From IMG/VR virus record IMGVR_UViG_3300035212_003113, positions 124,001 to 188,000 of that record: 64,000 nt of DNA. The stretch is one strand, 5' to 3'. Each line of letters begins with the position of its first letter. The first letter of the stretch is position 1. The notes under the pieces are model-generated. The model saw nothing but the letters and a program-made list of their open reading frames with translations, did no database searches and was not told the DNA's origin. Below, in pieces: positions 15,062-32,401 of the stretch. Made by a program: the position numbers and the translations under genes.

Positions 15062-16774
15062 ATGAAAGCACGTGATATTGTATTCGGCAAAGAGGCGCAG
15101 GACAAGATTACTCGCGGCCTCGAAAAGACTGCGAAAGCCGTACAGAGCACCCTCGGGCCACGCGGCCGCAACGTACTGATTCAGACGCCCTCTGGTTACC
15201 AGTTCACGAAGGATGGGATTACAGTCGCCAAGAACGTAGAGTTTAAGGATGCGTTTGAAAACATGGGCGCCCAGCTTGCTCGTGAAGCCGGCAATCGCTC
15301 GGTTCGTGCTGCAGGTGACGGTACCTCTTCTACGATCACCCTTCTCAATGCTATTGTGCAGGAAGGCAAACGTCAGATCAGCCTCGGTACCGATCCCATG
15401 AGCCTTCGCCGTGGCATTGACGCTGCGTGTACGCGTATTGTTAAGTGGGTCGAGGATCAAGCGGTACCAGTAAAGGGCATGGAAGATCTACTTCGCGTTG
15501 CCACTATCTCTGCAAACGGAGATGGCGAAATCGGCCGAATTATCGCAGATACGCTTGACAAGGTTGGTACTGATGCCACCGTCACCCTGGAAGAGGGCAA
15601 GGGAAATGTCACGAAAGTTACTCTGACAAAGGGCTTTGAGTTTGACCGTGGCATGGTCACCGAGCATTTCATGCGCGATTTTGAAAAGCAGCGCACGGTT
15701 TACGGTGACTCGGTTGACGACAGCATTCTCGCTCAGACGGACGCGCGTTTTTCAAACGCAGAAGACCCGCGCAGTGCGTATGTATGGCTCATCAACGGTC
15801 GCCTGGGCAGCCTTGCACAGGCCGAGGTCCGGGAGTCTTTCACCGCAATCCTGAATATGATTCACCAGACAAACGTTCCATTGCTTATTGTTGCTGAGGC
15901 TGTCGAGGGTGATGCCCTTAAGCTGCTTGCGCAGAATGCCATGCGCGGTATTCTTAATGTCGTAGCCGTACGAGCGCCTGGATTTGGCCAGGATCGCCGC
16001 GATCTAATGGAAGATCTTGCTACGGCCACTGGCGCAAAGGTTCGTCGTACCGATGCTGGTGACTCGCTCTTTGAGGATTTTTCTCTGGCAGAGCTCGGGA
16101 CTGCGCGCTTTGTGCAGGTTGGTCTGGACAAGACGATCATCATTCCACCTGATGAGCAGGCCGAGTCAATCGAGCGCCGTGTCTCAGAAATTGATGCAAA
16201 GATTGCCGTAACCACCGAAGATGATTTCCGCCACACTCTCACCCGCCGGCGCTCAATGCTTACGGGCGGCGTAGCGAATATCATTGTAGGCGGTCGCAGC
16301 GACGCCGAGGTGCGCGAGAAGCGCGATCTGTATGAGGATGCGCTGCTGGCTGCTCGTGCTGCTGCTCAGTCTGGCATCGTTCCTGGCGCGGGCACAATGC
16401 TCACTCGCGCCTCGGACATGCTAGCTGATTTCAGCACTGGCAACGAAGAGCAGAACGTAGGCGTTCATATTCTAAAGAAGGCCCTGCTTGTTCCATTCCA
16501 GGAGATCATCAAGAATGGCGGTGGCAGTGCAGAGGTAGTGCTTCATAATGTTCGCACGTCAACGGATCGTCATGCGGGCTATGATAGTAATCGTAACGAG
16601 TATTGCAATCTTCTAGAGCGCGGCATTATCGACCCCGCCCGTGTGATTGTAAGCGAAGTAGAGCATGCATGTAGCATGGCCGGCCTACTGCTGAGCACTG
16701 ATGTTGTCATTGGATTTGCGGATGAGCCTGATCTGATCAGAGCGCTGTCCGCAGCAAAACAGCAAAACGCTTGA
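15062..16774 (+). CDS. groEL: group I chaperonin (GroEL-like)
   Basis: TLGPRGRNV, TKDGITVAK, AGDGTSS, FDRG, APGFG, GIVPGAG, GIIDP. Confidence 0.95.
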   Translation: MKARDIVFGKEAQDKITRGLEKTAKAVQSTLGPRGRNVLIQTPSGYQFTKDGITVAKNVEFKDAFENMGAQLAREAGNRSVRAAGDGTSSTITLLNAIVQEGKRQISLGTDPMSLRRGIDAACTRIVKWVEDQAVPVKGMEDLLRVATISANGDGEIGRIIADTLDKVGTDATVTLEEGKGNVTKVTLTKGFEFDRGMVTEHFMRDFEKQRTVYGDSVDDSILAQTDARFSNAEDPRSAYVWLINGRLGSLAQAEVRESFTAILNMIHQTNVPLLIVAEAVEGDALKLLAQNAMRGILNVVAVRAPGFGQDRRDLMEDLATATGAKVRRTDAGDSLFEDFSLAELGTARFVQVGLDKTIIIPPDEQAESIERRVSEIDAKIAVTTEDDFRHTLTRRRSMLTGGVANIIVGGRSDAEVREKRDLYEDALLAARAAAQSGIVPGAGTMLTRASDMLADFSTGNEEQNVGVHILKKALLVPFQEIIKNGGGSAEVVLHNVRTSTDRHAGYDSNRNEYCNLLERGIIDPARVIVSEVEHACSMAGLLLSTDVVIGFADEPDLIRALSAAKQQNA

Positions 16775-16808
16775 AATAGGGGCCGGCAAACGGCCCTTAT
16801 TTTTTTTG
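16774..16808 (+). terminator. intrinsic terminator
   Basis: aaataggggccg-gcaaa-cggcccttatt plus T-run. Confidence 0.88.
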
Positions 16809-16815
16809 GAGAAAC

Positions 16816-17874
16816 ATGATAAACCTGGATCGTGCCGCACTTAATTCGCCATTTCCACGAGCAGAGGGCACAATATCACGTGCCATGCGACTGCATCGTC
16901 CGGCATCAAATGTACCTGGACAGGAAGCTCGATCTGCCGTAATAGAATGGCGCTCTGCTATTGCTGATCATCTGCAGCGAGATCATACCGATCTCAGTTT
17001 TTTCGGTTCTGCTACCGCTGCAGTTCGCTTTCTAGCTGACAAGTTAAAGGGCAAAGGCTTGGTCATCTATTGCTCAGAAGTGGAGCATTCGTGCTCCAGG
17101 AGCGTCGCAGATACGCTGCTGCCAGTAGACAGCGAAGGGCAGATATTCGGCAAGCTGGGCGGCGAAGACAATGTTCTGATCATCAGTGCAAAGAATAATG
17201 AGACCGGTATTCAGCCCACTGGCGAGACACGCAGGATTGTATCAGAGTTCCGGGACCGTGGAGGCATATGCGTGGTTGACGCTACAGGAGCAGACTGGCG
17301 CGATCCACTTGTGCTTGAGGCCGATTATATTTTTGCATCGGCTGGAAAGTGGAACGGACTGCCTGGAATGGGCCTGCTTGCAGGAACAAAAGGGATATGG
17401 GATAACCAGAACACAGAAGGCATGGGCGGGCTGATAGCTGGAAGCCCTAATACGATTGGTATTGCATGCCTTGCAGACGCAATGAGCTGGATTTCAAGTT
17501 CCCATGGGGACGGCCTGAAAGAAAAAGCGCGCAACTATAACGCAGCTTTTGATGAGCTGGCCGCAGAACTAGGCTGGATTAAAAATGGCTCAGGAGATTT
17601 TATAGCTAATTACTGCACAGGTATTCCGTCTGACCTATTCGTCGCTGCTGCAGGCGAACACGAGTTGGCGATAAGCGCAGGGTCTGCATGTAATTCTGGT
17701 TTTGCTACAGGCTCTCATGTCATTGCAGCTATGCACGGCGATGACCGGGCGCGATGCAGTGTACGCTTTAGCTGGGACAGGCTAACAAAAGAAACAGAGA
17801 TATCACAGGCTATCGCGATTGTAAGAAAGATCGACAATGAACTAAAGGCACTTCTGCCTAAAGGAGATAGATAA
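16816..17874 (+). CDS. divergent IscS/NifS-like PLP-dependent cysteine desulfurase
   Basis: EHS, NNETG, VDA, SAGK (PLP Lys), SAGSACNSG (catalytic Cys), SHVIAAM, SVRFS. Confidence 0.82.
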   Translation: MINLDRAALNSPFPRAEGTISRAMRLHRPASNVPGQEARSAVIEWRSAIADHLQRDHTDLSFFGSATAAVRFLADKLKGKGLVIYCSEVEHSCSRSVADTLLPVDSEGQIFGKLGGEDNVLIISAKNNETGIQPTGETRRIVSEFRDRGGICVVDATGADWRDPLVLEADYIFASAGKWNGLPGMGLLAGTKGIWDNQNTEGMGGLIAGSPNTIGIACLADAMSWISSSHGDGLKEKARNYNAAFDELAAELGWIKNGSGDFIANYCTGIPSDLFVAAAGEHELAISAGSACNSGFATGSHVIAAMHGDDRARCSVRFSWDRLTKETEISQAIAIVRKIDNELKALLPKGDR

Positions 17875-18478: not shown

Positions 18479-18516
18479 AATGAGAAAGGCGGGCGTTTTG
18501 CCCGCCTTTCTCATTT
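18479..18516. terminator. long-stem terminator between convergent transcription units
   Basis: aatgagaaaggcgggc-gtttt-gcccgcctttctcatt (16-bp stem). Confidence 0.88.
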
Positions 18517-18558
18517 CCTGAAACCCGGCCTAGGACTGGTAACAAGAAGCGCTAGCCC

Positions 18559-21500
18559 TTACACGTTACTGATGCAGTACCAGGCAGTGCTTATCCAGAC
18601 CCAAGTCTGCCCGCCACCAGCGGTCATCGTGCGCGCTACGCCGGTCGAAGGGGTTACCGTAGACCCGGCGCCCGAGATATTGACGAGCGAGATGGTGAGG
18701 CCGTCGTCGCTCACGGTCATCGCAGGGAGTGCCACTGCAGCTACGTTCACTGTGTAGGCGACGTTCGTGCGGAGGTTTGCTGCTGTTGGTGTTGCCGGAC
18801 AACTGCCCAGCGCCTTCACGCTGCTGGCCAGTTTGTCGAGAGCCGACCAGACCGTGGTGGGGTCAGGGTCGAGCCATTGGGTAGGCACCGTCGGCGTGTA
18901 CGCGAGCGAGCGCGAGTCGTCGAGGAAGTCGTAGGCGACGAGCGCGGAGACGGTGTACGTCGTCCCGGCAGCGGGGATCGGACTCCACGCAGGCGACACC
19001 GTGATGACCGTCCCGGTGTTGGACGAGACGGTGCGCGTCTGCCCCGATCCGGTTCCGCCCGTCAACGTGATCGTGCCGCCCACCCACTGATTTGTCGTGA
19101 ACGCCTTACTGGTGTCCGTGATCGTCGCAGATGCGCCCGCTGTTGCCGTTCCAGAACTCGTCGGGATGTTCAGCGGGCGCGCAGTGAGCACGCCGGTTGT
19201 CGTGCTGCGGCTGAACGCGAGCGTCGTGTACGACGTCGAGTCCATCTTGTAGCGAGCGCCGCCTCCAGAAGAACCGATCTGGTACCGCGAAGCCGGGATT
19301 CCCGTACCCGAATACACGCGGAACTGGTCGACGACCATTCCGAGGTAGGACGTCGAGGTCGATCCGGTGACACCGCCATTGTCGACGGTGCCGAGCATCG
19401 TGCGGTCGATGTCATAGATGCGGCAGCCGTCGATCTCACCGATGACCAGAGTCGGGCCGAGGGCTGCGCCAAGTGTTGAGTTATGGCACTTGAGCGTGAC
19501 GACACCTGACGGTGCTTTGTTCGCCGTGCCGATCAGCGAGTAGCCGGTGCTATTGGCAAGTGGCAGCAGCGGCGACCACGCGGGCGTGACCGTCAGCGTG
19601 TTCGCCGTGTTGGAAACGACCGTAGCCGTCTGGCCCGAACCTTGTCCTCCCGTCAGCGTGACCGTAGCACCAGCATACTGGTTGACCGTCCATGCCTTCG
19701 TCGTGTCTTGCAGGGTCGTGCTGCTCTGGGTGCCCGTGGCTTGGCCCGTGCCGAGGTTCCACGTCGACGGGCTGGAAGCGTAGGCGTAAGGCACCGCGCC
19801 GAGATAGGTGCGAACGAAGCCTGCCTCGCCGACGGTGCAGCCGTCGATCTCGATGACGCACGTCGGAAGACCGTTTGTCGTCGGGATCGTGTACGCGGTC
19901 GCGATAACCTGACCACCAATCAGGTTGGCCCGGTTCGCGTAGAAATTGAACTGCCCGTAGTTGGCATCCCAGTTTTGGCCGAGGTTCGATCCGGGGAAAG
20001 TCGGCTCGTTGAACAAGAGAGTGCTCAAGCCCGTGACCAACAGCGGATCAGAAGTCGCGTCGGCCTCGACACCGCCACCGACAGCACCCGTGATCTCGAA
20101 CGTCGTCAGCGCACCCGCACCAGTCCACGGCGCAGGGAAGCTCGCCCTGATAGACTGCATGTTCGATGCTGGGAAGTCGGCACGCACAGCAGCGAGCGTG
20201 ACGTTTCCGACGATCTGCACGCCGTTGCCGATCAACTGCACTCGCGCCCGCTTGAAGCCGAGTGTCACGTCACCGACGTAGCGCCCCGGCGCAAGCTGGA
20301 AGATCAGCTTCTCAGTGACGAACTGGCCGACGCTTGCGTTGTAGGTGGTGTTGCTGGGATCGCCAAGCGAAGGAACCTGCGAGTAGGCGTAGTTGATGCT
20401 CGCGTAGGGTTGGCCGAGCGTTCCGCCACCGGGGGCATCGGTGCCGTTGACCGGGTCGACGTAGACGGTGAGCGCCCCAGCGAAAACTGCGCCCGTTGCT
20501 GGCGCGCTCCACGCCACGCCAGTCGCTTGCGTGCTGTCGGCGGTGAGTACTTGACCGTTGGTGCCAACTGGGACACGAGTATTCGCGGTGCTGAAACCGA
20601 GAACGTCGCCCTTTGTCGTCAGCGGCGAAAGCGCGCCGAACGCTGCAGAGACAGTCGTCTGTCCTGTACCACCATTTAATACAGGAAGTATTCCTATTAT
20701 TTCACTAGGGCCGTCACCTAGATCAATAGGGGATGCAGGTGACTGCACTACGCCATCAATCACATGTATGACGCCTGTCCCGGATATTCCAAGGATAGTT
20801 GTCAACACATGGCTTGGATGACCATCTCCAAAATGGAAGGACACAGTGTGGCCAGCATCTGTGCATGTAGCTTCAAGCTCTACATAAACTCTGTCAGTTG
20901 ACAGCACAGTTGTTGATGAAAGCACAACAGAGCAAGTGTACTGTGTAATTGACCCAGGATTATATATAGGCGTTGGCTCTGAAGTAGTAAGAAGATTGGC
21001 GGTATATCCGTCATACTTATATACTTTTGCACGCATGTATGCTGCGCCGGGAAGGTCAACATCTGATGACGCCCATACGTTGAAGTCCCAGATTCCAGCT
21101 GGAATCACAGTTATCCCCGGAACATCAACTGCAGTCAAGAAGCCACCTACATAATCGTATACTCCTCCAGTTGACAGTACATTTGAAGTAAAGACCGTGT
21201 CTGCTGGATTTGATAAAAGAGTAAGTGCCTTAGTTGAATAAGGCGTAGACGGGAGTCCACCTAGTGGAGATTCTGCATCAGAACCGGCCTCCAGGAAGTA
21301 GGTCACTCCTCCACCGCCTCCAGAACCGCCGGATGCATTTGCTCCAGGAACCCAGGCGCTGCCGCTCCACGTAAGAACTTGCCCCGCTACTGGAGAAAGG
21401 CTGGACACCGCATTGCCGCGCAGTGCAATCACATCTGGAGAGAAAAGACTGCCCGACAGATCGCCGTCTACAGTAGATGATTTAATTGCGTCAATTGCAT

Positions 21501-22092
21501 CTTGAACATTCGTAACACCAAACGCAGGAGCAGCCAGCGAATCATCGTAGCTTATTCCATCTGCACTGTTAATGATTGCGGGCGGCACTACCCACGACAG
21601 GGCTCCATAACCATCATTGGCAAGCATCCCCTCCTCATCAATCGGCCAACCAGGAAAAGAGATATCAGGCGCAAGTCCTCCTGATGAAGCGAGTGGTGAT
21701 GTCGCTGTAACGCTCGACACTCCGCCACTGCCACCTCCCCCGCCGGACAACCACTTCAGCTCTCCGCTCTCGAATCCAAGGACCGCTCCCTCGAAATAAG
21801 CATTAGATGTCGAGAAGGAATCGGCAGATACGCCTGCGCCAGCATGGGTTGGGTTTACAAACTCGATGACTCGGATTACATTTAGTACTTTCCAGAGCCT
21901 GTATATCTCGCCACTTGGAGACTCCAGTTCTTTTAGAACGGTGGCTGTTAGTGAGCCAAAATCATTATACTCTAGCTCCGCGTACAAGTCTCTCTCTTCA
22001 CCAGGACGCAGCTTGACCCTGCCAAGAATATTAACATCTGACCTTGATATATTCCTTATTAAAAGTACTGGTTTTATCGGCGTAAAAGACAT
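18559..22092 (-). CDS. tail fibre / virion surface protein D (1177 aa, mosaic)
   Basis: Gly/Thr/Ser-rich; N-terminal ~120 aa paralogous to 22399..25647; fibre motifs GQVLTWSGSAW, LTTKGD, GTNGQVLTADST; YVDPVNGTD. Confidence 0.8.
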   Translation of the reverse strand: MSFTPIKPVLLIRNISRSDVNILGRVKLRPGEERDLYAELEYNDFGSLTATVLKELESPSGEIYRLWKVLNVIRVIEFVNPTHAGAGVSADSFSTSNAYFEGAVLGFESGELKWLSGGGGGSGGVSSVTATSPLASSGGLAPDISFPGWPIDEEGMLANDGYGALSWVVPPAIINSADGISYDDSLAAPAFGVTNVQDAIDAIKSSTVDGDLSGSLFSPDVIALRGNAVSSLSPVAGQVLTWSGSAWVPGANASGGSGGGGGVTYFLEAGSDAESPLGGLPSTPYSTKALTLLSNPADTVFTSNVLSTGGVYDYVGGFLTAVDVPGITVIPAGIWDFNVWASSDVDLPGAAYMRAKVYKYDGYTANLLTTSEPTPIYNPGSITQYTCSVVLSSTTVLSTDRVYVELEATCTDAGHTVSFHFGDGHPSHVLTTILGISGTGVIHVIDGVVQSPASPIDLGDGPSEIIGILPVLNGGTGQTTVSAAFGALSPLTTKGDVLGFSTANTRVPVGTNGQVLTADSTQATGVAWSAPATGAVFAGALTVYVDPVNGTDAPGGGTLGQPYASINYAYSQVPSLGDPSNTTYNASVGQFVTEKLIFQLAPGRYVGDVTLGFKRARVQLIGNGVQIVGNVTLAAVRADFPASNMQSIRASFPAPWTGAGALTTFEITGAVGGGVEADATSDPLLVTGLSTLLFNEPTFPGSNLGQNWDANYGQFNFYANRANLIGGQVIATAYTIPTTNGLPTCVIEIDGCTVGEAGFVRTYLGAVPYAYASSPSTWNLGTGQATGTQSSTTLQDTTKAWTVNQYAGATVTLTGGQGSGQTATVVSNTANTLTVTPAWSPLLPLANSTGYSLIGTANKAPSGVVTLKCHNSTLGAALGPTLVIGEIDGCRIYDIDRTMLGTVDNGGVTGSTSTSYLGMVVDQFRVYSGTGIPASRYQIGSSGGGARYKMDSTSYTTLAFSRSTTTGVLTARPLNIPTSSGTATAGASATITDTSKAFTTNQWVGGTITLTGGTGSGQTRTVSSNTGTVITVSPAWSPIPAAGTTYTVSALVAYDFLDDSRSLAYTPTVPTQWLDPDPTTVWSALDKLASSVKALGSCPATPTAANLRTNVAYTVNVAAVALPAMTVSDDGLTISLVNISGAGSTVTPSTGVARTMTAGGGQTWVWISTAWYCISNV

Positions 22093-22131
22093 GGTTCGCT
22101 CCCTCTAATTATTCTTTTCTGCAAAAAGCCC

Positions 22132-22374
22132 TCAAAATAAACCTAACTCAATGATAAGGTCCGCATCAGCAGAGCCATCCACTTGAAACAAAAAAAGCAA
22201 TATATGAGCAAGATTAACTCTGCGCAAATAGCTAGCGGCATCGGTCTCTGTGCCGATGGAAGTTAATTTCATTAATATCGCAGTATCACAAGCACTCACT
22301 GCATTAACTTCTAGCGGCGACATGGATAAAATGCCCTTTACCGCGACTACAGATACCCGGATGATTTTATTAAA
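22132..22374 (-). pseudogene. decayed duplicate of the C-terminal ~80 codons of the adjacent fibre gene
   Basis: AILMKLTSIGTETDAASYLRRVNLA...QVDGSADADLIIELGLF* aligns with [25 protein letters not shown]...[20 protein letters not shown]. Confidence 0.75.
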
Positions 22375-22398
22375 TCACTGCGGCATGCATCTGCCTTG

Positions 22399-25300
22399 CT
22401 AGTAGAGATCTATCTCTACAACGAGGTCCGCAGCCAACGACCCGTTGGAGCAATCGACCTGCACCGAGAGATAGTCGAATTGCGCGAAATCCACGCTGCG
22501 AAGGTAGCTGGTGGCGCTCGTTGAGGTACCACTTATCGTAGCCTTCATCAGTGTCGCGACGCCCGTATTACCCATGCCCGTTGTCGACTTGTTGATCGTG
22601 ACCGTGAGGTCTTCGCCGACGCCGCCTGCGGTGCGGATATTAATGAACATGCCTTGCAAAATCGTCTTCTGCTGAAAGCGATAAAATACTTCATCCGGGT
22701 CCATGCTGTTGACAAGTGTTCCAGGCCACAGGTAATGCTTACCGGAGTCGATATTACCCCGTACACAAAACTGAATCGTTGTCGGAGTGACGTAAGTGGT
22801 AAACGGGTGCGTGCAGGCAGTCTTTGTAACAAGATCGGTTCCCGGCCCTAGCTGTATGCCGTTTGTTCCGTTGCCTGCCTGTGGTGCGGACTGCAGAATG
22901 TCGCCGCCCGCGTACCGCTGCACCCACGTCAACGCTGCTGTTCCGACGAGGCCCGTGGTTGTACACTCCCAGCCTGTATACGCAAAGGTGCCGTCGTTGC
23001 AGAAGGTATATGCACCGAGCGCCTGGGAGCCCGATGCCATGTCGCCTGCACGCGTCCATGCACCTGCGGCAACGACGTAGATGCCGTTATCCACAGGGTT
23101 AGTTTGGCCAGTGGCAAGCACACGGTCACCGGCAACAAGGGCTACGCCTTGCAGCGTGTAGAGGCCAGTCAGCGCAGTGCTTGACGTTGTCACGACAACT
23201 GGCAGCTTTAGCTGTATTGCAGGATAAGGCGAACCTGCAATGCTTGTTGAGCGCGTCTGAATTTGCGAACCGCTATTCTCGACATAGACTCCGACATAGA
23301 GGCCCGTCGAGGTCGCGGTCGTCGGTGCCGCGACGTATATGTTGAGGTCGCGCGTCGAGAGCTGATTTCCTGCGCCCGTCGACGGCTGGTAGACGCCGAA
23401 CTTGTTGCCCGCGCCGTTGCTACGGACGTTGAGCGTGCTGCCCTTCAAGCAGTTGAACGAGAACGTCGCGACGTTGAGAGCACCCGTGCCGTTAGAGAGC
23501 ACCCCGTAGACGTTCGTCGTCGTGCCAACAGCGAGGCCGCTGTTGTCAACGGTGAGGACCGACGTGCGAAGTTTGCTCGTCACGCTCGTCGTGCCGGGGA
23601 GCGCGATGCCGACGAGATTCGTCGTCGCGTTCGCTGAGTTGAGCGTGAGGCTCAAGTCCTCGACACGCGTGTTCTCGCCCATCGTCAGCAACGTGACCGT
23701 GCCGCCGGGGTTGCTCGCGCTCATCACGATCCGCGTCGTCTGCAACGACATGCCGCGCAGTGAACAGTTGGCTGGGATCGTGAGGCCCGTCGTCGCCGAC
23801 GCGAGCGTATACGTCCCCGGCATGATCCACACGCTTACGCCTGTGAGGGAGTTCGTGTTAATATGCGAGATTGCGGCTTCGACGGTGAGGAACGGCGGAC
23901 CGTTCACGGTGCCCGTCGCGTCGTTGCCGTTCACGCCGTCCACGATCAGTACGTTGCCGAGCTTCGGAGTCAGCGCGCCGCTCGGAAGAGCGATTGCGAC
24001 ATTCGACGCGCTCGTGATGCGGCCCTTAGCGTCAACAGCTATCTGAGCAACGCTGGTGCTGCTACCATAAGTATTAGCTGCAACACCCGTCGTTGTCAGC
24101 GTTGGGTTCGGATACGTATCGGTGAGGTCACCACCAGCAGGACCGCTTGGCGGGAGACTTGTTGGAGGCGCAGGGAACGCGATTGGGGTCGTCGTCGCGG
24201 TGGTGACGTGGCCCTTCGCGTCCACGGTGACCTGCGCGACGTTGGTGCCGTCGCCGTAGGTACCTGCGACGACGCCGCTGGCGTTGTGGGAGACGACCGG
24301 GTTCGCTCCTGTCGTCACGTTGATCGGGGCGGTGCCGGTGACTGACTGGATCGGAGCCGCCGGGAACGCGATGGCGACTTCCGTCGCCGACGTGACGCGA
24401 CCCTTCGTATCGACGGCGACCTGTGCGACGTGCGTACCGTCGCCGTAGGTGGTCGCGACGACTCCCGTCGTCGTGAGCGTTGGGTTCGGATAGCTGCCAG
24501 TCAGATCGCCACCCGCTGGGCCGTTCGGCGGAAGGCTCGTCGGAGGTGCGGGGAACGCAATAGGGGTAGTCGTTGCCGAGGTGACATGCCCCTTGGCATC
24601 GACCGTGAGCCTCGCGCTATTCGTACCGTCACCGTAGGTGGCAGCCACGACACCGCTCGCATCATGACTGACGGTCGGGTTCACACCCGCAGTGACGCTG
24701 ATAGGAGCAGTACCAGTGACCGATTGAATCGGTGAGGAGGGGAACGCAATCGCAACGCTACTCGCGCTCGTGACACGACCCTTGGCGTCGACCGTGACCT
24801 GAGCAACGCTGGTGCCGCTGCCATAGGTATTAGCGGCAACCCCTGTTGTCGTCAGCGTTGGGTTCGGGTAGGTGCCCGTGAGATCGCCGCCGGCGCTTCC
24901 GTTCGGAGGGATGCTTGCTGGAAATGATATCGGAGTTGTCGTCGCCGAGGTGATGCGACCTTTTGCGTCGACCGTCAAACTAGCACTATTTGTGCCGTCG
25001 CCATAGGTATTTGCGACCACACCTGTTGCCGTAAGTGTCGGATTTGGATAAGTCCCAGAGAGATCCCCTCCAGCAGAACCCAATGGAGGCAGTGCAGCTG
25101 GAAATGATATCGGCTCATTGCTTGCACTTGTAATTATGCCTTTTTCACTTACGGTCAGTATGGGCACAGTTGCGCCGTTGCCATAGGTACCTGCAACTAC
25201 TCCGCTATCCTGAATACTTATATTTGGCGTTACTCCGCCTGTAGATGATAGCGGGTTCGATGCACTCACGCCTGATACGCCTACTGTCGCGCCGCCGGCA

Positions 25301-25647
25301 AGCCACTTTAATCCGCCGCTTTCAAAACCTAGTACAGCTCCTTCGAAATAGCTATTTGTTGTTTGAATAGCGCTTGCAACTAATCCATCGCCTTGGTAAG
25401 ATGGATTTATAAAGTTAATTACTTCAATCTTTCTATATATCTTCCACAGAAGATAGATCTCTCCTGCCGGAGCCTCGAGCTCTCTTAGTATTGTGCTGGT
25501 AAGAGGAGATCCATACTCTTTATATTCTAGCCGACTATAAAGATCAACAATTTCCCCTGGTCTTATCTTTACTTTTCCAAGTAGATTGACATCAGATTTA
25601 GTTATATTCTTTACAGTAAATATCGGAAATACCGGATCAGTCCTCAT
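22399..25647 (-). CDS. tail fibre / virion surface protein C (1082 aa) with repetitive shaft
   Basis: Seven TYG-x8-VDAKGRxTSA-type repeats, GDRVL...NGIY fibre module, globular C-terminus. Confidence 0.85.
23985..25285 (-). repeat. intragenic tandem repeat, seven ~60-codon units with two linker types
   Basis: GGDLxxxYPNPTL linker x4 and VTGTAPI/VSASNPL linker x3, each followed by GVxAxTYG...VDxKG. Confidence 0.85.
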
Positions 25648-25666
25648 GAGTCGCCCCCTCTTCTAC

Positions 25667-28600
25667 TCACTTCAGCGGCTCTAGTAATAGCTCTAATGCT
25701 GCCAGTCTGGCTTCTAGATCCTGATTCTTCTGATGCAGCTCCTGGCATGCCTTTACGACGACGGGAAATAGTCGCAGTGGGGTTGCCTCTAATCTATCTG
25801 GATTATCTTTTAGGGCCAGGCCCATCCACTCCGCATTAGCAGCAGTCTGCGCGGCGTCGAGTTCCTGCGCAATGAATCCGCCCTCAAACTTTTCCTGCTT
25901 CTTGCTGCCGTCAGACACCCCCGGTGTCTGGCCGATAACATTGCCTTCGTCGTCGAGGACTGGAGAGGAGTACCACTCACGGCGGTCCCATTTGAACTGC
26001 ACAGGGCGCACGGTCGAGAGAAAATCTATGCCGAGCGAAATGTCTTGGATGTCAGCCTTGTCGCGCGCGTCGGAGATCAGCGTGATCGTGTTAACTGCGC
26101 AACGCAGCGTCGTCACCGACGAGTTGCCAAGCGTGATCTGATTTGTCGCACTAACGGCAGTCGGAGTCGCGCCATTTCCGATACAAGTCAGGTTCGTTCC
26201 TGATAGAAAAGCGACGCCGCCTGCCGTCTGCCCGAGCACGGTGTTCGTGATCTGCGAGCCCAGCCCTCTTCCGACGTTCAAGCCGTTGATCAGCGCATCA
26301 CCGCCTTGAACATCAAGCGTGGCCGCAGGGTTGACGTTCCCGCCAGTCGCATTTACCAGTACCCTGTTGTTTGACGTATCTACTGCAAATATGCGTACTG
26401 AACCGGCTGCATTTTGTACCTGAAATGCAGTGGTATTGCCCGTATTCGCTCTGGCTATAACAGAGCCAGCGATTCCAGCGTTCGCTCTTGCTCCTGCGAC
26501 AATCACTACGTCGCCGCCGTTTGTGTTTCCTACTGCTGCACCGGCTTGAGCAGTCAGAGTGATACTTGTTCCGTTGCCAGACCCGGCCGTGCCACCTGCC
26601 ACTTGCAGCGGCCCTGTAGGCGTCGACGTACCGACTCCGAGCCGTGAGTTCGTGTTATCCCAGAACAGCCTAGCATTATTCTGCGAATAGATGCCTGATG
26701 CGCCAGCGAAAACAACGCTGCCTAGGGTGAACGCGGTTGCCGTTCCCGTGCCGCCGTTCGCTGCACTGACCGTGCTCCATGAAAACGTGCCCGACCCGTT
26801 GTTCGTCAATACGCCCGAAGCGTTCGCTGCCGGGAACGTCGTCGTCTGACCCCGGATGGCGACGATGTCGCCATCCGCGCTGACTTGAAACTGACCCGTC
26901 GTGCCGACGTTGAGCGTCGATGACAACGTGCGCGAACTGGAGGCCACCGTCGTCGTCGTGTAATAGCCAGACGGGAGTGTCAGCCCGCCGTTCACTATCG
27001 TTGGCGTCGCCAAGATGGCAAAATTTGTGGGAGCTAGCAGAGCCGACGCCAGTGTGTTTCCGGTGACGCCCGTTCCGTACCGAACCATGACCGAGCTAGC
27101 AGTGTTCACGTCTCTGACGACGGTTCCAGCCGGGACAAACAGGTCAAACGACGCCTCAACGGTACACACTGCTGTCGTGGTCAGGGAAATAGTCGTACTG
27201 CCGAGCGTGAGAACGCCGCTGAACGTGACCGCAGGGACAAAGCCAATGCCCAACCGGTTGTTCGTGTCGTCCCAGAATAGGTTGTTGTTGTCCTGCGTAT
27301 AGACACCCGACGCGCCAGCGAAGACAACGCTGCCGAGGGTCAACGCAGGGCCGCTCGGTGCAGTTGCCCATGACAGATTGCCTGCACCATCATTAACAAG
27401 AGCTCCTACTGCATCTGGAGTAGGGAACCCGCGATCCAATACGCCGCCGCCTAGTAACTCGTAAGAAGATGCAGTTATCCTGCCGCCATTTGAAATAGTT
27501 ACTTGAGGAATTCCCGTCTCAGAAATATTGAGATAGCCGTCATCAATATTTACTCCTATGGACCAGTCTGCTGGAAATGCAGACTCGCTAAGTTTAGAGA
27601 CCAGGTGCAGGGACGTTGGGCCGAAATACCCATCTGCCCAGCGGTTTGCGTATGACCCTATTTCATATGCAAGATCGGTATCAGGAATGAGCGAGGCATT
27701 TATAGACGTAGTTGTGAGATTACTAAGTGCTCTGTTGGCTATGCTGGCATCGTCTATAGTATCAAGCGCACTCTGAACAGTGGTGTCCGCTGGAGACAAT
27801 ATGCCATTAAAGCTAGCTGTGTCAGTGTATATCGCACTCGCCGGATGATCTGGATCAAGTAGCCCAGAAAGATTACCGTGATCGCTTATCTGATTTATTG
27901 GCAACGAAGAGACTTTGCGCAAGTCTACGTAATTTGCGCCTGTATCGGTGGACACAATTCTACCTTTTATGGCATTTGTATAGGCATTTGCTGTTTGATA
28001 TATAACTGTGCCAATTATCACTATCTCTGCGAATGGCAGACCCGACAGCGTAGCAAGCTCGGTTGTAGCTCCGGAGCGGGCCGCACTTATGTTGTTGTAT
28101 TCGTTTATGCCCTGTATTGCTATAATTGGATGATTTATGTCATTTGTTGCAAAGACATGCACTAGCACGAAATTGCCGCTTGTCAGCTCTGTTAGCTGCC
28201 ACGTAGAGCCGGTCCACTGATTATAAGGAAGCCTCCCGCCAGCACCTGTATAGCCCGCAGTTCCAGAATAGATTATAGGAAATGTGTCGGCCGTCTTACT
28301 TCTCCAATTACCGGAGACTCCCTCTCTAAAGAAAACCGGTATGCTGGCAATTGGAGCAAGCTCCTGGGGGGCACCATCTGTTATTATATGCTTTATGTCT
28401 TCGTCATAAAACATGCCATTTCCGGCAGAAAACTGGCCATGAATTGCGCTGTCTCCGGCGCCGTCAACATTGAAATCGCTTAGTGCGAATCCATTTATAA
28501 AAGCAGCGCCCATGCTATTATGTAGCCACAGGTGCGTTCCGCCGTCCATGACAAGACCATGACGCTCATCTGCAACGTATATCGCCTTGTTGTTTCCGGC

Positions 28601-28912
28601 GTCCCAGTATACGATTGATACGATTGCATAGGATAAAATCAAGTCATCTGAAAATGTTTGTGTGGTCTCTAGCGTGTAGCCATCAAAATAAAAAAACCAC
28701 AGCCCCTCTGTGTCTGTTATAGAAGCAGATGCAGCGGACAGATGAGTATATTTCACTCCTTGTGCATAGTACTCGAAACGAGATGATGTCGGGGTAATCG
28801 TAAGAGTGCGACTTGTGTCATCAAACGACAGCGTCGTGTCGGCTCTGTTGGGAAAACCGGTTGGCTCCTTGGACATCTCATATATTGTCTTTACGTTTGG
28901 ATTGTGCGACAT
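25667..28912 (-). CDS. tail fibre protein B with C-terminal S74 intramolecular chaperone
   Basis: ISDARDKADI...GIDFLSTVRPVQFKW...GFIAQE...VVKACQEL coiled coil; LFWDxTNxRLGxG repeats. Confidence 0.9.
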   Translation of the reverse strand: MSHNPNVKTIYEMSKEPTGFPNRADTTLSFDDTSRTLTITPTSSRFEYYAQGVKYTHLSAASASITDTEGLWFFYFDGYTLETTQTFSDDLILSYAIVSIVYWDAGNNKAIYVADERHGLVMDGGTHLWLHNSMGAAFINGFALSDFNVDGAGDSAIHGQFSAGNGMFYDEDIKHIITDGAPQELAPIASIPVFFREGVSGNWRSKTADTFPIIYSGTAGYTGAGGRLPYNQWTGSTWQLTELTSGNFVLVHVFATNDINHPIIAIQGINEYNNISAARSGATTELATLSGLPFAEIVIIGTVIYQTANAYTNAIKGRIVSTDTGANYVDLRKVSSLPINQISDHGNLSGLLDPDHPASAIYTDTASFNGILSPADTTVQSALDTIDDASIANRALSNLTTTSINASLIPDTDLAYEIGSYANRWADGYFGPTSLHLVSKLSESAFPADWSIGVNIDDGYLNISETGIPQVTISNGGRITASSYELLGGGVLDRGFPTPDAVGALVNDGAGNLSWATAPSGPALTLGSVVFAGASGVYTQDNNNLFWDDTNNRLGIGFVPAVTFSGVLTLGSTTISLTTTAVCTVEASFDLFVPAGTVVRDVNTASSVMVRYGTGVTGNTLASALLAPTNFAILATPTIVNGGLTLPSGYYTTTTVASSSRTLSSTLNVGTTGQFQVSADGDIVAIRGQTTTFPAANASGVLTNNGSGTFSWSTVSAANGGTGTATAFTLGSVVFAGASGIYSQNNARLFWDNTNSRLGVGTSTPTGPLQVAGGTAGSGNGTSITLTAQAGAAVGNTNGGDVVIVAGARANAGIAGSVIARANTGNTTAFQVQNAAGSVRIFAVDTSNNRVLVNATGGNVNPAATLDVQGGDALINGLNVGRGLGSQITNTVLGQTAGGVAFLSGTNLTCIGNGATPTAVSATNQITLGNSSVTTLRCAVNTITLISDARDKADIQDISLGIDFLSTVRPVQFKWDRREWYSSPVLDDEGNVIGQTPGVSDGSKKQEKFEGGFIAQELDAAQTAANAEWMGLALKDNPDRLEATPLRLFPVVVKACQELHQKNQDLEARLAALELLLEPLK

Positions 28913-28928
28913 ATTTACTCCACCCTGA

Positions 28929-31900
28929 TCAGATTATCCACCAAGCGCTGCCATCCGATTGAATCTTTATTGCTTCATACTGTGTGCTGAGCGTGTATGT
29001 TGTCGCGCCGTCTATTAGTTCGGACGCATCAGCATCTACGGTGACAATATTCGCCGTGATGTCTTTTTTCTTTATAGTAAATATGCGTTCGACTGCTGAT
29101 GCAGCGGATGGCAGCGTCATCGTTATTGCGCCGGAAGAAGCATCGGCCAAAATTGTGCCATCGGAAGAGGCCAGAGTATAATTGGCAGTTTTGGTTGAAA
29201 TCGGCGCAGTGCTGTTCTGTGCGGCGCCCGAGGTCCATGACAGAGTTCCGCTTCCATTGTTTGTTAGAATAGAATTTGCAGAGCCCTGAGATGATGGGAA
29301 GCTATATGGGATATCGTTTATTCTAGTTAGATCCCCGCTAGAGCTTACCTGGAACTGCGAGCTGGCGCCGACGGATAGCGCCGAAGCTGGCGCGTTCGTA
29401 CCGACACCGACACGCGCATTCGTCGTGTCGACGTCGAAGATGGTCGAGCCCGCTGCGTTCTGCACCGAGAATGCGGTCGTGCCGTCCGACGTGTTCCTCG
29501 AGAGCACGACGCCGTCGTTGCCGACGCTGAAAGTGGTCGTGCCGTTATCACGGGCAAGGAAGATTGGATCGCCCTTGTCCATGTTGTCTGCTATCAGCGC
29601 CGCTGAGGCGTTGACCGTAGGCTGCGACGCGCCTGTGGTCTGCAAAGCGAACAGGCCGCCGATGCGGATACCGCTGTTGTTCTTCGCCATGCCCGTGACG
29701 GCTATGTTGGCACCAGTGCCGTCGCCTGTTGTGTTGCCGAAGACGGCGTAGTTGCGGGCGCCGTTCGACGCGAGGCCCATCATACCGATGTTGTGGCCAG
29801 ATGCCGTCGTGCCCGCAGCCGAGCCTTGCAGCGCGAAGTTGGCTTGTAGCGCCGAGACGGGGTCTTGTCCGCTGCCTGCGATCACGGTGCCGAAGCTGCC
29901 CGCGTAAGAAGTTGACGGCGTACCTGCGCCGCTCAAATAACCGATAACGCCGTAGACCGGGGCGACGACGCTCGCAGATACGCTTCCTTCAATGTACGAA
30001 ACGATGGTTCCGCCGCCAGGGGTCAGGGTTGCGTCGACGTTCAGCGCGTACACGCCACTGGCCGTCGAGCCTGCCTGCACGTCGACGACGTGCGCCGGAG
30101 TTGCTATGCCTACGCCTAGGCGATTATTTGAATCGTCCCAGTACAGGTTGGAATCCGATGATAGCGATGAAGTGCCGCTCCAAAATGCCACGCGCGTAGC
30201 TACGCCACTGCCTGTAACAGTACCTGCTGGTGACCATGACAGGTTGCCCGAGCCATCATTTGTCAGCGCGCCCGACGCATTCGCCGCCGGGAACGTCGTC
30301 GTCTGGCCCCGGATAGCGACAATGTCGCCCGAGGAATTAACTTGGAACTGAGAGGATGAGCCAACAGATAATAGCGATATAGGACTTGTAGTCCCTATGC
30401 CAACGCTCCCGGCATTTGTGATACGCACACGCTCAGTCGTTGAGCTGCCTAACGTAGTAAATCCATCAGTGCCGCTAGCAGTCGTGTGAAATTCAATTCG
30501 ACCGCCGCTCGCCGTCGACGTAAAAGCCTGCTCGGCCTTCATAGTCATCATCGCGCCGTAGTTAATGCCGCCCGTGGCAGTCCAACCTGCACCGAGCACA
30601 TTGATCATGCCGTCGCCAGCGCCGATCTGCGTCGGCGCGGCCTTCGTTCCTCTCGAACGCACACCGGCAAACTGACCACCGCGATATGACTCTTGAAGCA
30701 CGGTTCCAGCGGCGCCGTGCCCAAGCATCACCGCGCCTGCTGTCACGTCAGAACTGTCAAACGTAAACTGCCCGTATACAGTCGACGTTCCAACCAGAAA
30801 CACGGGCGATCCGCCCGACTGCTGGAAGCGCGCGATCTCCGTGCCGTTGACGCCGACACCGATAATATCGTTCGACGGCGAGAAGAAGCCGCTGTTCAGG
30901 TTGTCGCGGAAGGCGACGGCGGGAGCGGCGGCGCTACCATCGGGGATGGCGAGTTGGCCGCTGGCGATGTCAAGGGCGGCAACGGGGGCGTTGGTGCCGA
31001 TACCCAGTTTACCGCTGCCCGTGTTGTCCCAATAGAGGTTCGCATTCGACGACAGCGACGAAGCGCCATCCCAGAATGCCACACGCGTTGCAGTACCGCT
31101 GCCGGTGACCGTGCCACTTCCGCCCGCCGCAGCCCACGACACGTTGCCGGCGCCGTCTGTCGTGAGTACTTCACCGCTCGCGCCGTCTATCATTGGAAGG
31201 GTAAATGCATCGCTTATATTTACCGGAGTGGTGACGGAACCGATGGTTACCCCAGTTGTTAAATAATAGGCCGAATTATTTCCTATTTTAATTGGTCCGC
31301 CATCATTATCAATCCACAGCGGCTTCTCAATCGGATACTCGTTATTGGTATAGCGAAGCGAAAGACCAGGCGAGAATCCAAGTGACCCCTGAAGCTGTAG
31401 GAGTGCAGTGTCGTCGGTAGCGCCGAGCTTAAGATAAAGCGCAGGGTCGCCCAGATCTAGACCGAGTGCAGCCTCGTTGCCCCCTATAGAAGGGACCAAC
31501 GGCCCCGCCACAAATCGGGCATACTGACTGGATAAAATTCCTTCTACTCCAAGATTCTCGACTACCACTGCTCCAGTAGTCAGCCACTTCAAGGCAGAGC
31601 TGCCGTCAAAAACTCCTGCATTGCTAAATTGAATCGCCCGATCTGGACCGCCTGGTGCGCCACTTGCAGGCGAATCCCACGATAGATTTCCGGCTCCATC
31701 GTTCGTTAATACAGTTCCGGCAGAGCCCACGGCCGCAGGCCAGGCCGCATCAACGCCTCCAGACCCCAGAAACAAGGTTCCTATTGCAGAAATCTGAATG
31801 TCAGCAAAGCTTGACAGCGATATATTTTCTGTGCCAGAGACAGAAAACTCGCCATTCCCGGAATCCGTTGTAATCGTGTTGCCCGACTCATAAGCAGCCT

Positions 31901-32216
31901 GTAAGCTAGAGCTAGCAGAGGAAAGAAGGGCAAGTAGGCTGTCAACACTTATTTTATTTAACTCTGTAGAGGCATAATCTATGTACGCAATGTAGCCGTC
32001 TAGCAGCGGTGGTACTATTGGAGCCACCAGGAATTCGCCATAAAAGTAGCCATCTGCCGAGCCGGACAACCCCTGATATGACCCACCATCCAGTGAAAGC
32101 TCTATTCGGCCAAGGTCGTAGTTATACCTAATTATGGCCATACCGGCTTCTGGAACGCCTAGACCCTCGCCCGCCCTAAAGGTCAGAAAAGGAATTGTTT
32201 GTTTTTTCTGCGTCAT
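28929..32216 (-). CDS. tail fibre / virion surface protein A
   Basis: GAGGAG RBS before ATG 32216; repeated LTxDGxGNxSW, ERVRITNAGSVGIGT; C-terminal TKTANYTL...SDGSAWWII domain. Confidence 0.85.
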   Translation of the reverse strand: MTQKKQTIPFLTFRAGEGLGVPEAGMAIIRYNYDLGRIELSLDGGSYQGLSGSADGYFYGEFLVAPIVPPLLDGYIAYIDYASTELNKISVDSLLALLSSASSSLQAAYESGNTITTDSGNGEFSVSGTENISLSSFADIQISAIGTLFLGSGGVDAAWPAAVGSAGTVLTNDGAGNLSWDSPASGAPGGPDRAIQFSNAGVFDGSSALKWLTTGAVVVENLGVEGILSSQYARFVAGPLVPSIGGNEAALGLDLGDPALYLKLGATDDTALLQLQGSLGFSPGLSLRYTNNEYPIEKPLWIDNDGGPIKIGNNSAYYLTTGVTIGSVTTPVNISDAFTLPMIDGASGEVLTTDGAGNVSWAAAGGSGTVTGSGTATRVAFWDGASSLSSNANLYWDNTGSGKLGIGTNAPVAALDIASGQLAIPDGSAAAPAVAFRDNLNSGFFSPSNDIIGVGVNGTEIARFQQSGGSPVFLVGTSTVYGQFTFDSSDVTAGAVMLGHGAAGTVLQESYRGGQFAGVRSRGTKAAPTQIGAGDGMINVLGAGWTATGGINYGAMMTMKAEQAFTSTASGGRIEFHTTASGTDGFTTLGSSTTERVRITNAGSVGIGTTSPISLLSVGSSSQFQVNSSGDIVAIRGQTTTFPAANASGALTNDGSGNLSWSPAGTVTGSGVATRVAFWSGTSSLSSDSNLYWDDSNNRLGVGIATPAHVVDVQAGSTASGVYALNVDATLTPGGGTIVSYIEGSVSASVVAPVYGVIGYLSGAGTPSTSYAGSFGTVIAGSGQDPVSALQANFALQGSAAGTTASGHNIGMMGLASNGARNYAVFGNTTGDGTGANIAVTGMAKNNSGIRIGGLFALQTTGASQPTVNASAALIADNMDKGDPIFLARDNGTTTFSVGNDGVVLSRNTSDGTTAFSVQNAAGSTIFDVDTTNARVGVGTNAPASALSVGASSQFQVSSSGDLTRINDIPYSFPSSQGSANSILTNNGSGTLSWTSGAAQNSTAPISTKTANYTLASSDGTILADASSGAITMTLPSAASAVERIFTIKKKDITANIVTVDADASELIDGATTYTLSTQYEAIKIQSDGSAWWII

Positions 32217-32401
32217 ATGCTCCTCAGCGCCAGGGGATCCAGCCCAATACAATGCACGGAGAACCATAGTTATTAAATGCGGGTGGTCCGCGAGCATTAA
32301 TTATATTTGCGTCAGATCGCAAACAAGCCGCGACCGCCGGCTGCAACTGAAGGCAACTAATTGAATAACAGTCTTTCTGATCTTTTCACATGGAGCAAAT
32401 A

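What the first reader, a model, noticed from the sequence alone, without database searches (positions are those of the whole stretch)
22132..22650. Ghost copy of a fibre tip in the intergenic spacer
The spacer between fibres C and D encodes, on the same strand, a stop-free ~80-codon AT-drifted copy of fibre C's C-terminus. Register is exact from IR to LMK (27 residues in each), and SYLR, QVD and ADL-x2-E-x2-L-[FY]* are retained. Differences are not limited to adenines, so this is not a DGR TR/VR pair. Inference: the scar of a tip-replacement event, or a silent alternative tip available by recombination.
Basis: seen in the sequence. Interest (0 to 1): 0.6.

Follow-up and report, generated by a model that had tools for sequence, protein, structure and literature searches.

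The report
Leftover tip of a replaced phage fibre
The spacer after one tail-fibre gene of a 372-kb freshwater jumbo phage is the decaying, untranslated end of an earlier version of that gene. It was left behind when the receptor-binding end was swapped by recombination, and a variant strain has done the same swap once more.

Summary
Window 22132-22374 (minus strand) is an 80-codon, stop-free, degenerate copy of the last ~83 codons of the fibre gene 22399-25647. The local alignment scores 99, against a mean of 24.8 and a maximum of 56 in 5000 shuffles. The copy period is 267 nt, and these are the only two copies in the 371,675-bp genome.

It is not a fresh copy of the present tip, a DGR template or a usable silent cassette.
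- Nucleotide identity is 47% and third codon positions are saturated.
- GC3 is 0.39 in the ghost and 0.72 in the tip.
- The ghost keeps 7 of 23 family-conserved residues.
- It covers about 7 of the 10 strands of a TNF/C1q-like head domain.
- The longest run of bases identical to the tip is 9 nt.
- The genome has no reverse transcriptase and no serine invertase.

The best reading is a C-terminal displacement scar. A GC-richer distal fibre segment with its own stop codon was recombined in, and the old 3' end stayed downstream and is decaying. A variant strain (L040) supports this directly. There a third, unrelated tip has replaced the window-type tip. The last 39 codons of the window-type tip lie out of frame after the new stop, followed by the same old ghost. 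In L040 the start codon of the 63-aa ghost ORF is lost.

This is a new member of a known kind and of moderate interest.

The parts
22132..22374 (-). Ghost tip. It is 80 stop-free codons plus TGA and is a decayed remnant of the last ~80 codons of an earlier TNF/C1q-like head domain of fibre C. It contains a 63-aa ATG ORF (22132-22323) that gene callers report (P0115).
   Evidence: P0115 has no relatives among 1.84 billion representatives. Its ATG is GGG in strain L040.
22375..22398 (-). Junction of 24 nt (CAAGGCAGATGCATGCCGCAGTGA), directly after the resident stop codon. It is probably the 5' end of the remnant: CAAGGCA matches the Q998-G999 codons (CAAGGCATG) of the resident copy. It now holds an insertion and an in-frame TGA.
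   Evidence: Seen in the sequence. A 7-nt exact match at the collinear place has shuffle P = 0.035, which is moderate support only.
22399..22656 (-). Resident copy: fibre C residues Q998-Y1082 plus stop TAG. This is the part of the present tip to which the ghost is homologous.
22402..22791 (-). The whole resident tip domain (about residues 953-1082), a 10-strand TNF/C1q-like jelly roll.
   Evidence: AlphaFold model from a 40-sequence alignment, pLDDT 84-96 over this part. Foldseek finds 4-1BBL, C1q-like, Eiger, APRIL and adiponectin heads at E 4e-4 to 3e-3, TM 0.4-0.55 by target.
22399..25647 (-). Fibre C (1082 aa): an anchor shared with fibre D, then repeats, a central domain and the tip. GC3 is 0.22-0.46 in codons 1-250 and 0.48-0.88 (mostly above 0.6) beyond, so the presumed imported part starts near window 24900-24970.
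   Evidence: The full-length orthologue P0001 is 86% identical.
22093..22131 (-). The 39 nt between the ghost's stop and the start of fibre D, with the ribosome-binding site GAGGGAG. The ghost's stop lies close to the next start, much as the stops of fibres A and B do (16 and 19 nt), while the resident stop of fibre C lies 306 nt away.
18559..22092 (-). Fibre D (1177 aa), the next gene in the fibre operon. It is a paralogue of fibre C in its first ~125 residues.
   Evidence: the translations show the shared N-terminal sequence. The GC3 mosaic switches at codon ~500.
22290..22324 (-). A 35-nt patch inside the ghost that holds all 13 differences between the window and strain L040 in the ghost. 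They make 7 amino-acid changes and 2 silent ones, including loss of the ORF's ATG.

Best explanation
The ghost is a C-terminal displacement scar: the untranslated, decaying 3' end of an earlier allele of fibre C.

Proposed mechanism:
1. A related, GC-richer phage supplied a new distal fibre segment with its own stop codon.
2. The left crossover was homologous, within the conserved shaft or repeat region.
3. The right join was illegitimate and fell inside the old tip-coding sequence, about 86 codons before the old stop.
4. Those codons were therefore kept between the new stop and the ribosome-binding site of fibre D.
5. They now sit as a spacer inside the fibre operon, encode nothing useful and are accumulating unconstrained changes.

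Shown here: the homology, the decay, the compositional mismatch, and a second event of the same kind in a variant strain. Inferred: the order of events and the recombination mechanism of the first event.
For: 1. The homology is real, and the only two copies in the genome lie in tandem with a 267-nt period.

2. The ghost is not derived from the present tip sequence.
- Over the last 49 codons, nucleotide identity by codon position is 0.61/0.73/0.33, so synonymous sites are saturated.
- Even tips 80% identical in protein have third-position identity of 0.36.
- GC3 is 0.39 in the ghost and 0.72 in the tip, while the genome's non-coding gaps average 0.49 GC.
- I simulated neutral decay of the resident tip down to GC3 0.39. 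This needs an equilibrium GC of 0.35 or less. It yields amino-acid identity of 0.16-0.26 (0.36 observed), third-position identity of 0.36-0.46 (0.32 observed), a mean of about 3.5 stops, and P(no stop) of about 0.03.

3. The ghost has decayed since.
- It keeps 7 of the 23 columns that are at least 85% conserved in the family; 112 real family tips and the resident tip keep at least 15 of 28, median 27.
- Its matches to the resident tip are as frequent in variable columns (7/16) as in conserved ones (5/21). This is the opposite of every real distant member.
- Its end branch in the tree is 3.35, against a median of 0.068.
- It has an in-frame TGA at its 5' side.

4. The ghost's stop lies 39 nt before the start of fibre D. 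This is close to the 16- and 19-nt gaps at the other fibre junctions, and far from the 306 nt that separate the resident stop of fibre C from fibre D.

5. Strain L040 shows the same process repeated.
- L040 is identical to the window up to window ~24210.
- It then switches, inside a shaft repeat that is 79-93% identical between the two, to a very GC3-rich (0.88-0.94) tip of another kind. This tip is 89% nucleotide-identical to the fibre of L041, a phage of 62% GC.
- Homology to L041 ends exactly at the stop codon.
- After 76 nt come the last 39 codons of the window-type tip (out of frame), then the same junction and the old ghost.

6. There is no sign of constraint on the ghost frame between strains. 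The ghost has 7 non-synonymous and 2 synonymous codon changes, against 2 and 6 in the neighbouring tip remnant (Fisher P = 0.057). The ATG of the 63-aa ORF is lost in L040.

7. All four fibre genes have low-GC3 proximal parts and high-GC3 distal parts, as expected if distal modules are imported repeatedly. The resident tip module occurs on more than 110 fibres with unrelated N-terminal parts.
Against: - No genome with the ancestral state was found, that is, a fibre C that ends in a functional ghost-type tip. The ghost has no relative other than itself among 1.84 billion representatives.
- None of the 30 related loci checked, other than L040, has a second tip copy.
- The ghost starts directly after the resident stop codon. 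It also shares resident-specific residues at variable columns and joins the resident tip's own 11-member clade (quick tree, long branch). A tandem duplication would give the same pattern.
- L040 is a single 2347-bp metagenome contig.
- The depth of decay, about 53% nucleotide difference, is surprising for useless DNA in a phage.
Confidence: 0.78

Rival explanations
1. In-situ tandem duplication. The last ~86 codons plus the stop of the resident fibre C were duplicated head to tail, and the untranslated downstream copy then decayed and drifted towards AT.
For: - The copies abut with no spacer: TAG is followed at once by CAAGGCA, which matches Q998-G999 of the resident copy.
- They are in the same frame.
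- The ghost scores best against the resident tip and its nearest kin and sits in their clade.
- Its matches to the tip are spread evenly over conserved and variable columns.
Against: - Third positions are saturated while second positions keep 57-73% identity.
- GC3 of 0.72 falling to 0.39 cannot arise by drift in a genome whose non-coding DNA is about 0.49 GC. Even with an extreme AT bias, simulations give too little amino-acid identity, too much third-position identity and about 3.5 stops.
- The variant L040 shows that displacement by foreign DNA does happen at this locus.
- The rival survives only if the upstream copy was later swapped for a GC-rich allele, which is itself a tip replacement.
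Confidence: 0.13
2. The ghost is functional. Either it is a small protein (the 63-aa ORF 22132-22323), or it is a silent cassette that can be recombined onto fibre C to change host range.
For: - It has 80 codons without a stop.
- The ORF is called as a gene in public annotations (P0115).
- The sequence is identical in every sampled contig from the seven or more samples.
Against: - The identity across samples extends to the whole 8 kb, so the population is clonal and the identity says nothing about selection.
- In the one diverged strain the ATG is GGG and 7 of 9 changed codons alter the protein.
- There are no homologues anywhere.
- The ghost lacks strands 1-3 of the jelly roll and most family-invariant residues.
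- The longest identical run with the tip is 9 nt.
- The genome has no invertase and no reverse transcriptase.
- There is no RNA structure (z = 0.09) and no Rfam family.
Confidence: 0.05
3. The pair is the template repeat and variable repeat of a diversity-generating retroelement.
For: Only the layout fits: a repeat of the 3' end of a fibre gene lying just downstream of it.
Against: - Nucleotide identity is 47%.
- Mismatches occur at all four bases.
- There is no RVT_1 match in the complete genome, while the control genomes respond.
- There is a 9-nt indel between the copies.
Confidence: 0.005

Closest known systems
C-terminal displacement with orphan remnants in Rhs and CdiA polymorphic toxin loci (Jackson et al. 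2009, as cited in PMC3150448; Poole et al. 2011, PMC3150448)
   Same: - A conserved N-terminal body carries a variable C-terminal module.
- New C-terminal modules arrive by horizontal transfer.
- Fragments that encode alternative C-terminal ends lie immediately downstream without translation starts.
- Several such fragments can stack up; L040 has two.
   Different: - This is a phage receptor-binding fibre, not a toxin.
- There is no immunity gene.
- There is no conserved demarcating motif (VENN or PxxxxDPxGL) at which tips are reloaded. The two right-hand junctions here fall at different places, 86 and 39 codons before the old stops.
- The remnant is decayed and truncated within a domain, so it cannot be reused.
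Mosaic tail-fibre and receptor-binding genes of phages and tailocins, made by recombination (for example the T4-superfamily LTF locus, PMC3157838; Pectobacterium carotovoricin, PMC13195805; relaxed homologous recombination in temperate phages, PMC3945230)
   Same: - The distal, host-recognising part is exchanged among unrelated backbones. The resident tip module sits on more than 110 fibres with different N-terminal parts.
- The crossover falls in conserved shaft repeats.
   Different: In those systems the exchange is usually clean, or both ends are homologous. Here the right end is a non-homologous join that leaves a datable fossil of the previous tip, twice in one lineage. The host genome is a 372-kb jumbo phage with four tandem fibre genes.
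Invertible tail-fibre segments (Mu Gin, P1 Cin, carotovoricin Ein; mentioned in PMC13195805)
   Same: An alternative 3' end of a fibre gene is stored next to the expressed one.
   Different: - The ghost lies in direct, not inverted, orientation.
- The genome has no serine recombinase.
- There are no flanking inverted crossover sites.
- The ghost is not an intact coding end.
DGR target genes such as Bordetella phage BPP-1 mtd (comparison from my own knowledge)
   Same: A repeat of the fibre tip's 3' end lies just downstream of the gene.
   Different: - There is no reverse transcriptase.
- Identity is 47% rather than near-identity.
- Mismatches are not tied to adenines.

Membership tests
C-terminal displacement scar (Rhs/CdiA-type orphan remnant) | A remnant homologous to the 3' end of the upstream gene lies directly downstream on the same strand, without its own 5' part | tested here: met
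   The ghost covers only about the last 7 of the 10 strands of the tip domain.
C-terminal displacement scar (Rhs/CdiA-type orphan remnant) | The expressed C-terminal part is of foreign origin relative to the conserved 5' part | tested here: met
   GC3 is 0.22-0.46 in codons 1-250 and 0.48-0.88 (mostly above 0.6) beyond; the genome mean is 0.51, sd 0.07. The tip module is shared with more than 110 otherwise unrelated fibres.
C-terminal displacement scar (Rhs/CdiA-type orphan remnant) | Related strains differ by which tip is expressed and share the downstream remnants | tested here: met
   L040 has a new tip, then a remnant of the window-type tip, then the same old ghost. This rests on a single short contig.
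C-terminal displacement scar (Rhs/CdiA-type orphan remnant) | The remnant corresponds to the functional end of a full-length gene elsewhere | tested here: not met
   No protein among 1.84 billion representatives resembles the ghost more than the resident tip does. For L040's younger remnant the feature is met, because the window's fibre C is that gene.
C-terminal displacement scar (Rhs/CdiA-type orphan remnant) | A conserved junction motif allows reloading, and there is a linked immunity gene | tested here: not met
   The two right junctions fall at different positions. The longest run identical to the tip is 9 nt. There is no further gene in the 306-nt spacer.
Diversity-generating retroelement | A reverse transcriptase gene in the element | tested here: not met
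   PF00078 finds nothing in the complete 371,675-bp genome, while the control genomes respond.
Diversity-generating retroelement | TR and VR nearly identical, with differences only at TR adenines | tested here: not met
   Identity is 47%. The ghost base at the 120 mismatches is T 51, A 29, G 21, C 19.
Invertase-driven fibre switch (Gin/Cin/Ein, shufflon) | A site-specific invertase, with alternative ends in inverted orientation between inverted repeats | tested here: not met
   PF00239 is absent from the genome. The ghost is in direct orientation. Only weak inverted repeats are present. Tyrosine recombinases were not searched.
TNF/C1q-like trimeric head domain (resident tip) | A 10-strand jelly-roll fold of about 130 residues at the C-terminus of a fibrous protein | tested here: met
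   The model has pLDDT 84-96 over the domain. Foldseek matches TNF-family and C1q heads at E around 4e-4 and probability 1.0, with modest TM of 0.4-0.55. Trimer formation was not tested.

The most novel reading that the evidence does not exclude
The remnants may not be mere debris. The fibre operon might keep a stack of former tip ends as downstream homology that guides later re-acquisition or exchange of tips from co-infecting relatives. That would be a phage counterpart of the orphan cassettes of Rhs and CdiA loci. The 35-nt patch of clustered changes would then mark ongoing conversion.
Probability: 0.05. Interest if true: 0.7.

Novelty: new member of a known kind. Interest (0 to 1): 0.4.

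Why it matters
Host range in phages is set largely by fibre tips, and tips are known to be swapped. The swap itself is rarely caught, because clean exchanges leave no trace.

Here the previous tip's end is preserved, and a sister strain shows the next swap on top of it. This gives the direction, the donor type and both junction types:
- the donors are GC-richer phages;
- the left crossover is homologous, in a shaft repeat;
- the right join is non-homologous.

It also matters for annotation. The 63-aa ORF called in public records is a pseudogene fragment, not a gene. Beyond that the phenomenon is an expected by-product of known mosaic evolution.

Tried and rejected
- Phage GenBank records (INPHARED): no DNA relatives in blastn with window 18500-26000; only two trivial hits.
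- Pfam and PHROGs: nothing informative for the tip.
- Ghost peptide against IMG/VR: only the same phage.
- Ghost against 1.84 billion representatives: only itself, plus a spurious hit to a repetitive 1724-aa protein with no aligned stretch.
- First metagenome scan, with the alignment of fibre C and P0001: nothing.
- Second metagenome scan: 19 relatives, none with a second tip copy.
- P0001, the full-length orthologue (86% identical): its contig has only 127 nt between the fibre and the next gene, but no DNA could be fetched.
- Loci of P0003, P0005 and P0007: no ghost.
No read-level test for junction reads, variants or transcription was made, and read laying was not used.
- Promoter and terminator scan: counts as in the shuffles.
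- RNA fold of the spacer: z = 0.09. Rfam: nothing.
- My early reading that the ghost diverged wholly under purifying selection was dropped after the conserved-column tests. A two-phase history fits better: coding divergence first, then decay.
- Scan of the whole genome for other C-terminal remnants downstream of ORFs: it found only tandem small paralogues and antisense artefacts. With its default filters it did not re-detect this ghost, so it is not evidence of absence.
- One protein comparison failed on a frame error and was not repeated.
- The careful tree did not finish in time, so the quick tree is used.
Full report
**Context**

The window is bases 124001-188000 of a 371,675-bp virus record with direct terminal repeats, that is, a complete jumbo phage genome from IMG/VR. 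Relatives come from metagenome assemblies; several record names look like freshwater-lake samples, but this was not checked. The genome carries phage helicase, SbcC-like and GroEL-like genes.

Four large genes lie in tandem on the minus strand:
- fibre A, 28929-32297 (1122 aa);
- fibre B, 25667-28912 (1081 aa, with a Peptidase_S74 end);
- fibre C, 22399-25647 (1082 aa);
- fibre D, 18559-22092 (1177 aa).

Fibres C and D share their first ~125 residues. The gaps between genes are 16 nt (A-B), 19 nt (B-C) and 306 nt (C-D).

**Check of the observation**

In the frame of fibre C, the stop TAG is followed by seven codons, then TGA, then 80 stop-free codons that end in TGA at 22132-22134. These 80 codons align with the last 83 residues of fibre C.
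- BLASTP gives 25/52 identical, E 5e-12.
- Smith-Waterman gives 99, against 24.8 +/- 4.5 and a maximum of 56 in 5000 shuffles.
- These are the only two copies in the genome. A 267-nt direct-repeat period was found independently.
The 27 residues between IR and LMK are at chance identity.
- The ghost ORF is carried by 13 contigs, and the seven loci with DNA, from seven samples, are base-for-base identical to the window over up to 8.2 kb. The arrangement is therefore real and the sampled population is clonal.

**What the tip is**

The C-terminal ~130 residues of fibre C fold with high confidence (pLDDT 84-96) into a 10-strand beta sandwich. Its nearest solved folds are TNF-family and C1q head domains.

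The module is widespread. 114 proteins carry it at 35-87% identity on very different N-terminal parts, including collagen repeats and Laminin_G_3. The family consensus runs to the last column and ends in the same DL[FY] motif, so the resident stop is the natural end of the protein. P0001 is a full-length orthologue of fibre C, 86% identical with fewer shaft repeats.

The ghost corresponds only to about the last seven strands.

**The ghost is not a recent copy of the present tip**

Nucleotide identity is 47%, and the longest identical run is 9 nt.

Over the well-aligned last 49 codons, identity by codon position is 0.61/0.73/0.33. Third positions are therefore near the chance level of 0.23. Synonymous sites saturate fast in this family: the window tip and the L013 tip are 80% identical in protein, yet their third-position identity is only 0.36.

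GC3 is 0.72 in the tip and 0.39 in the ghost. Genes of this genome average 0.51 (sd 0.07), and its non-coding gaps average 0.49 GC.

I simulated neutral decay of the resident tip sequence until GC3 fell to 0.39. This requires an equilibrium GC of 0.35 or less. It gives 16-26% amino-acid identity (36% observed), third-position identity of 0.36-0.46 (0.32 observed) and about 3.5 stops, with P(no stop) about 0.03.

The two copies were therefore already different alleles when the ghost stopped being translated.

**The ghost has decayed since**

- At family columns conserved in at least 85% of members, the ghost keeps 7 of 23. Real members keep at least 15 of 28, median 27.
- Its identities to the resident tip are spread evenly over conserved (5/21), intermediate (14/41) and variable (7/16) columns. 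Every real distant member is enriched at conserved columns (45-77%) and depleted at variable ones (0-20%).
- In a tree of 114 tips it joins the 11-member clade of the resident tip (SH-aLRT 98) with an end branch of 3.35, against a median of 0.068. This is a quick tree and the long branch calls for caution.

The picture is a two-phase history. First came coding divergence from a fairly close relative of the present tip. Then came unconstrained change. The TGA at the 5' side fits this, as does the probable extension of homology to the base after the resident stop (CAAGGCA against Q998-G999; shuffle P = 0.035).

**A second event seen directly**

Fibre C's 90%-identity cluster holds a 606-aa protein, P0118. 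It lies on the 2347-bp contig L040.
- L040 matches the window at 98.2% from the end of fibre B through codon ~494 of fibre C. It is 100% identical over the last 210 nt before the break.
- At L040 1585-1626 (window ~24210-24170) it switches to a different tip of about 115 residues with GC3 of 0.88-0.94. The switch falls inside a shaft repeat that is 79-93% identical between the window type and the donor type.
- This tip has no counterpart in the window's genome.
- It is 89% nucleotide-identical to the end of a 382-aa fibre on L041, a contig of 62% GC. That homology stops exactly at the stop codon.
- After 76 further nucleotides, L040 resumes homology with the window at 22515. It then carries the last 39 codons of the window-type tip (ATSYLRSV...EIDLY, stop), now out of frame behind the new stop. 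Next come the identical 24-nt junction and the first 54 codons of the old ghost, where the contig ends.

L040 thus carries two stacked remnants. It shows the proposed mechanism in action: a homologous left crossover in the shaft, a non-homologous right join inside the previous tip, and an incoming stop codon that silences what remains.

**Constraint on the ghost**

Between the window and L040, the young tip remnant differs at 9 of 117 nt. Six changed codons are silent and two are not.

The old ghost differs at 13 of 163 nt. The changes fall at codon positions 1, 2 and 3 as 3, 6 and 4, giving seven replacements and two silent changes. They include ATG to GGG at the start of the 63-aa ORF (Fisher P = 0.057).

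The ORF (P0115) has no relative among 1.84 billion representatives. It is therefore not a conserved gene.

**Other readings tested**

- DGR: no reverse transcriptase, and mismatches at all four bases.
- Invertase switch: no serine recombinase, direct orientation, and no convincing inverted repeats.
- Functional RNA: fold z = 0.09 and no Rfam match.
- Regulatory signals: not above the shuffled expectation.
- Silent cassette: runs of 9 nt or less shared with the tip, a truncated domain and lost invariant residues make reuse implausible.
- In-situ tandem duplication remains the main rival, at about 0.13. It is favoured by the exact abutment and by the ghost's closeness to the resident tip. It is disfavoured by the composition, the synonymous saturation and the precedent of L040.

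**Wider pattern**

All four fibre genes have low-GC3 proximal parts and high-GC3 distal parts. The switch comes at about codon 350 in A, 500 in B, 250 in C and 500 in D. In other phages the tip's GC3 roughly follows the GC of the surrounding DNA in most loci, though not in all (L015 is an exception). The distal modules of this 51%-GC phage therefore look like un-ameliorated imports from GC-richer phages.

None of the 30 related loci examined, other than L040, has a remnant. Scars like this are thus uncommon or short-lived.

**Comparison with known systems**

The closest described phenomenon is C-terminal displacement with orphan remnants in Rhs and CdiA loci (PMC3150448 and the Jackson et al. 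2009 reference within it). The closest biological context is mosaic tail-fibre evolution (PMC3157838, PMC13195805, PMC3945230). This case shares the architecture of the former and the biology of the latter. It lacks an immunity gene, a reload motif and intact cassettes.

**Limits**

- L040 is one short contig.
- The ancestral state was not found.
- The 13 clustered changes in 35 nt are unexplained, as are the ghost's GC below the non-coding mean and the survival of a useless remnant to this depth of divergence.

**Verdict**

'Scar of a tip replacement' is supported and 'silent alternative tip' is not. This is a new member of a known kind, with interest about 0.4.

Noticed in passing
window 18559-32297 (minus strand): Four tandem fibre genes of 1081-1177 aa each have low GC3 (0.22-0.54) in the proximal part and high GC3 (0.6-0.88) in the distal part. 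The switch falls at a different codon in each gene. This suggests repeated import of distal modules from GC-richer phages.
   Followed up: partly
window 22290-22324: All 13 differences between the window and strain L040 within the ghost lie in one 35-nt patch. Ten are A/T in the window and G/C in L040. The patch overlaps one arm of a 16-nt inverted repeat (22252-22267 / 22303-22318). The cause is unknown.
   Followed up: partly
L040 1-2347; L041 826-1418: The variant strain carries a different fibre tip of about 115 residues (ending ...GGTFMFVYNGSLWVEV...). It is 89% nucleotide-identical to a 382-aa fibre of a phage contig of 62% GC. The same module occurs at 63-64% identity on two more fibres (P0120, P0121).
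   Followed up: partly
window 23000-25200 (fibre C residues ~150-560): Fibre C holds a long array of repeats ([14 protein letters not shown]...[11 protein letters not shown]) that matches phrog_36881 five times. The orthologue P0001 lacks 252 residues of the array, so repeat number varies between relatives.
   Followed up: partly
window 15026-17874: A GroEL-like chaperonin gene (phrog_5725, E 2e-122) is followed by a 352-aa ORF (16816-17874). From its translation it looked to me like a cysteine-desulfurase-type aminotransferase, but I did not test this.
   Followed up: no
window 54711-62807: A single 2698-aa ORF on the plus strand. It was not examined.
   Followed up: no
genome 30-951, 1968-2495, 344266-344754, 16123-16776 (outside the window): Small ORFs of 150-220 aa whose C-terminal halves recur at 37-64% identity just downstream. 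These are tandem arrays of small paralogues, several of them near the genome ends.
   Followed up: no
window 25667-28912: Fibre B ends in a Peptidase_S74 intramolecular chaperone domain (Pfam E 1.6e-6; phrog_4636 tail spike, E 1e-34). Its mature tip is therefore probably released by self-cleavage.
   Followed up: no
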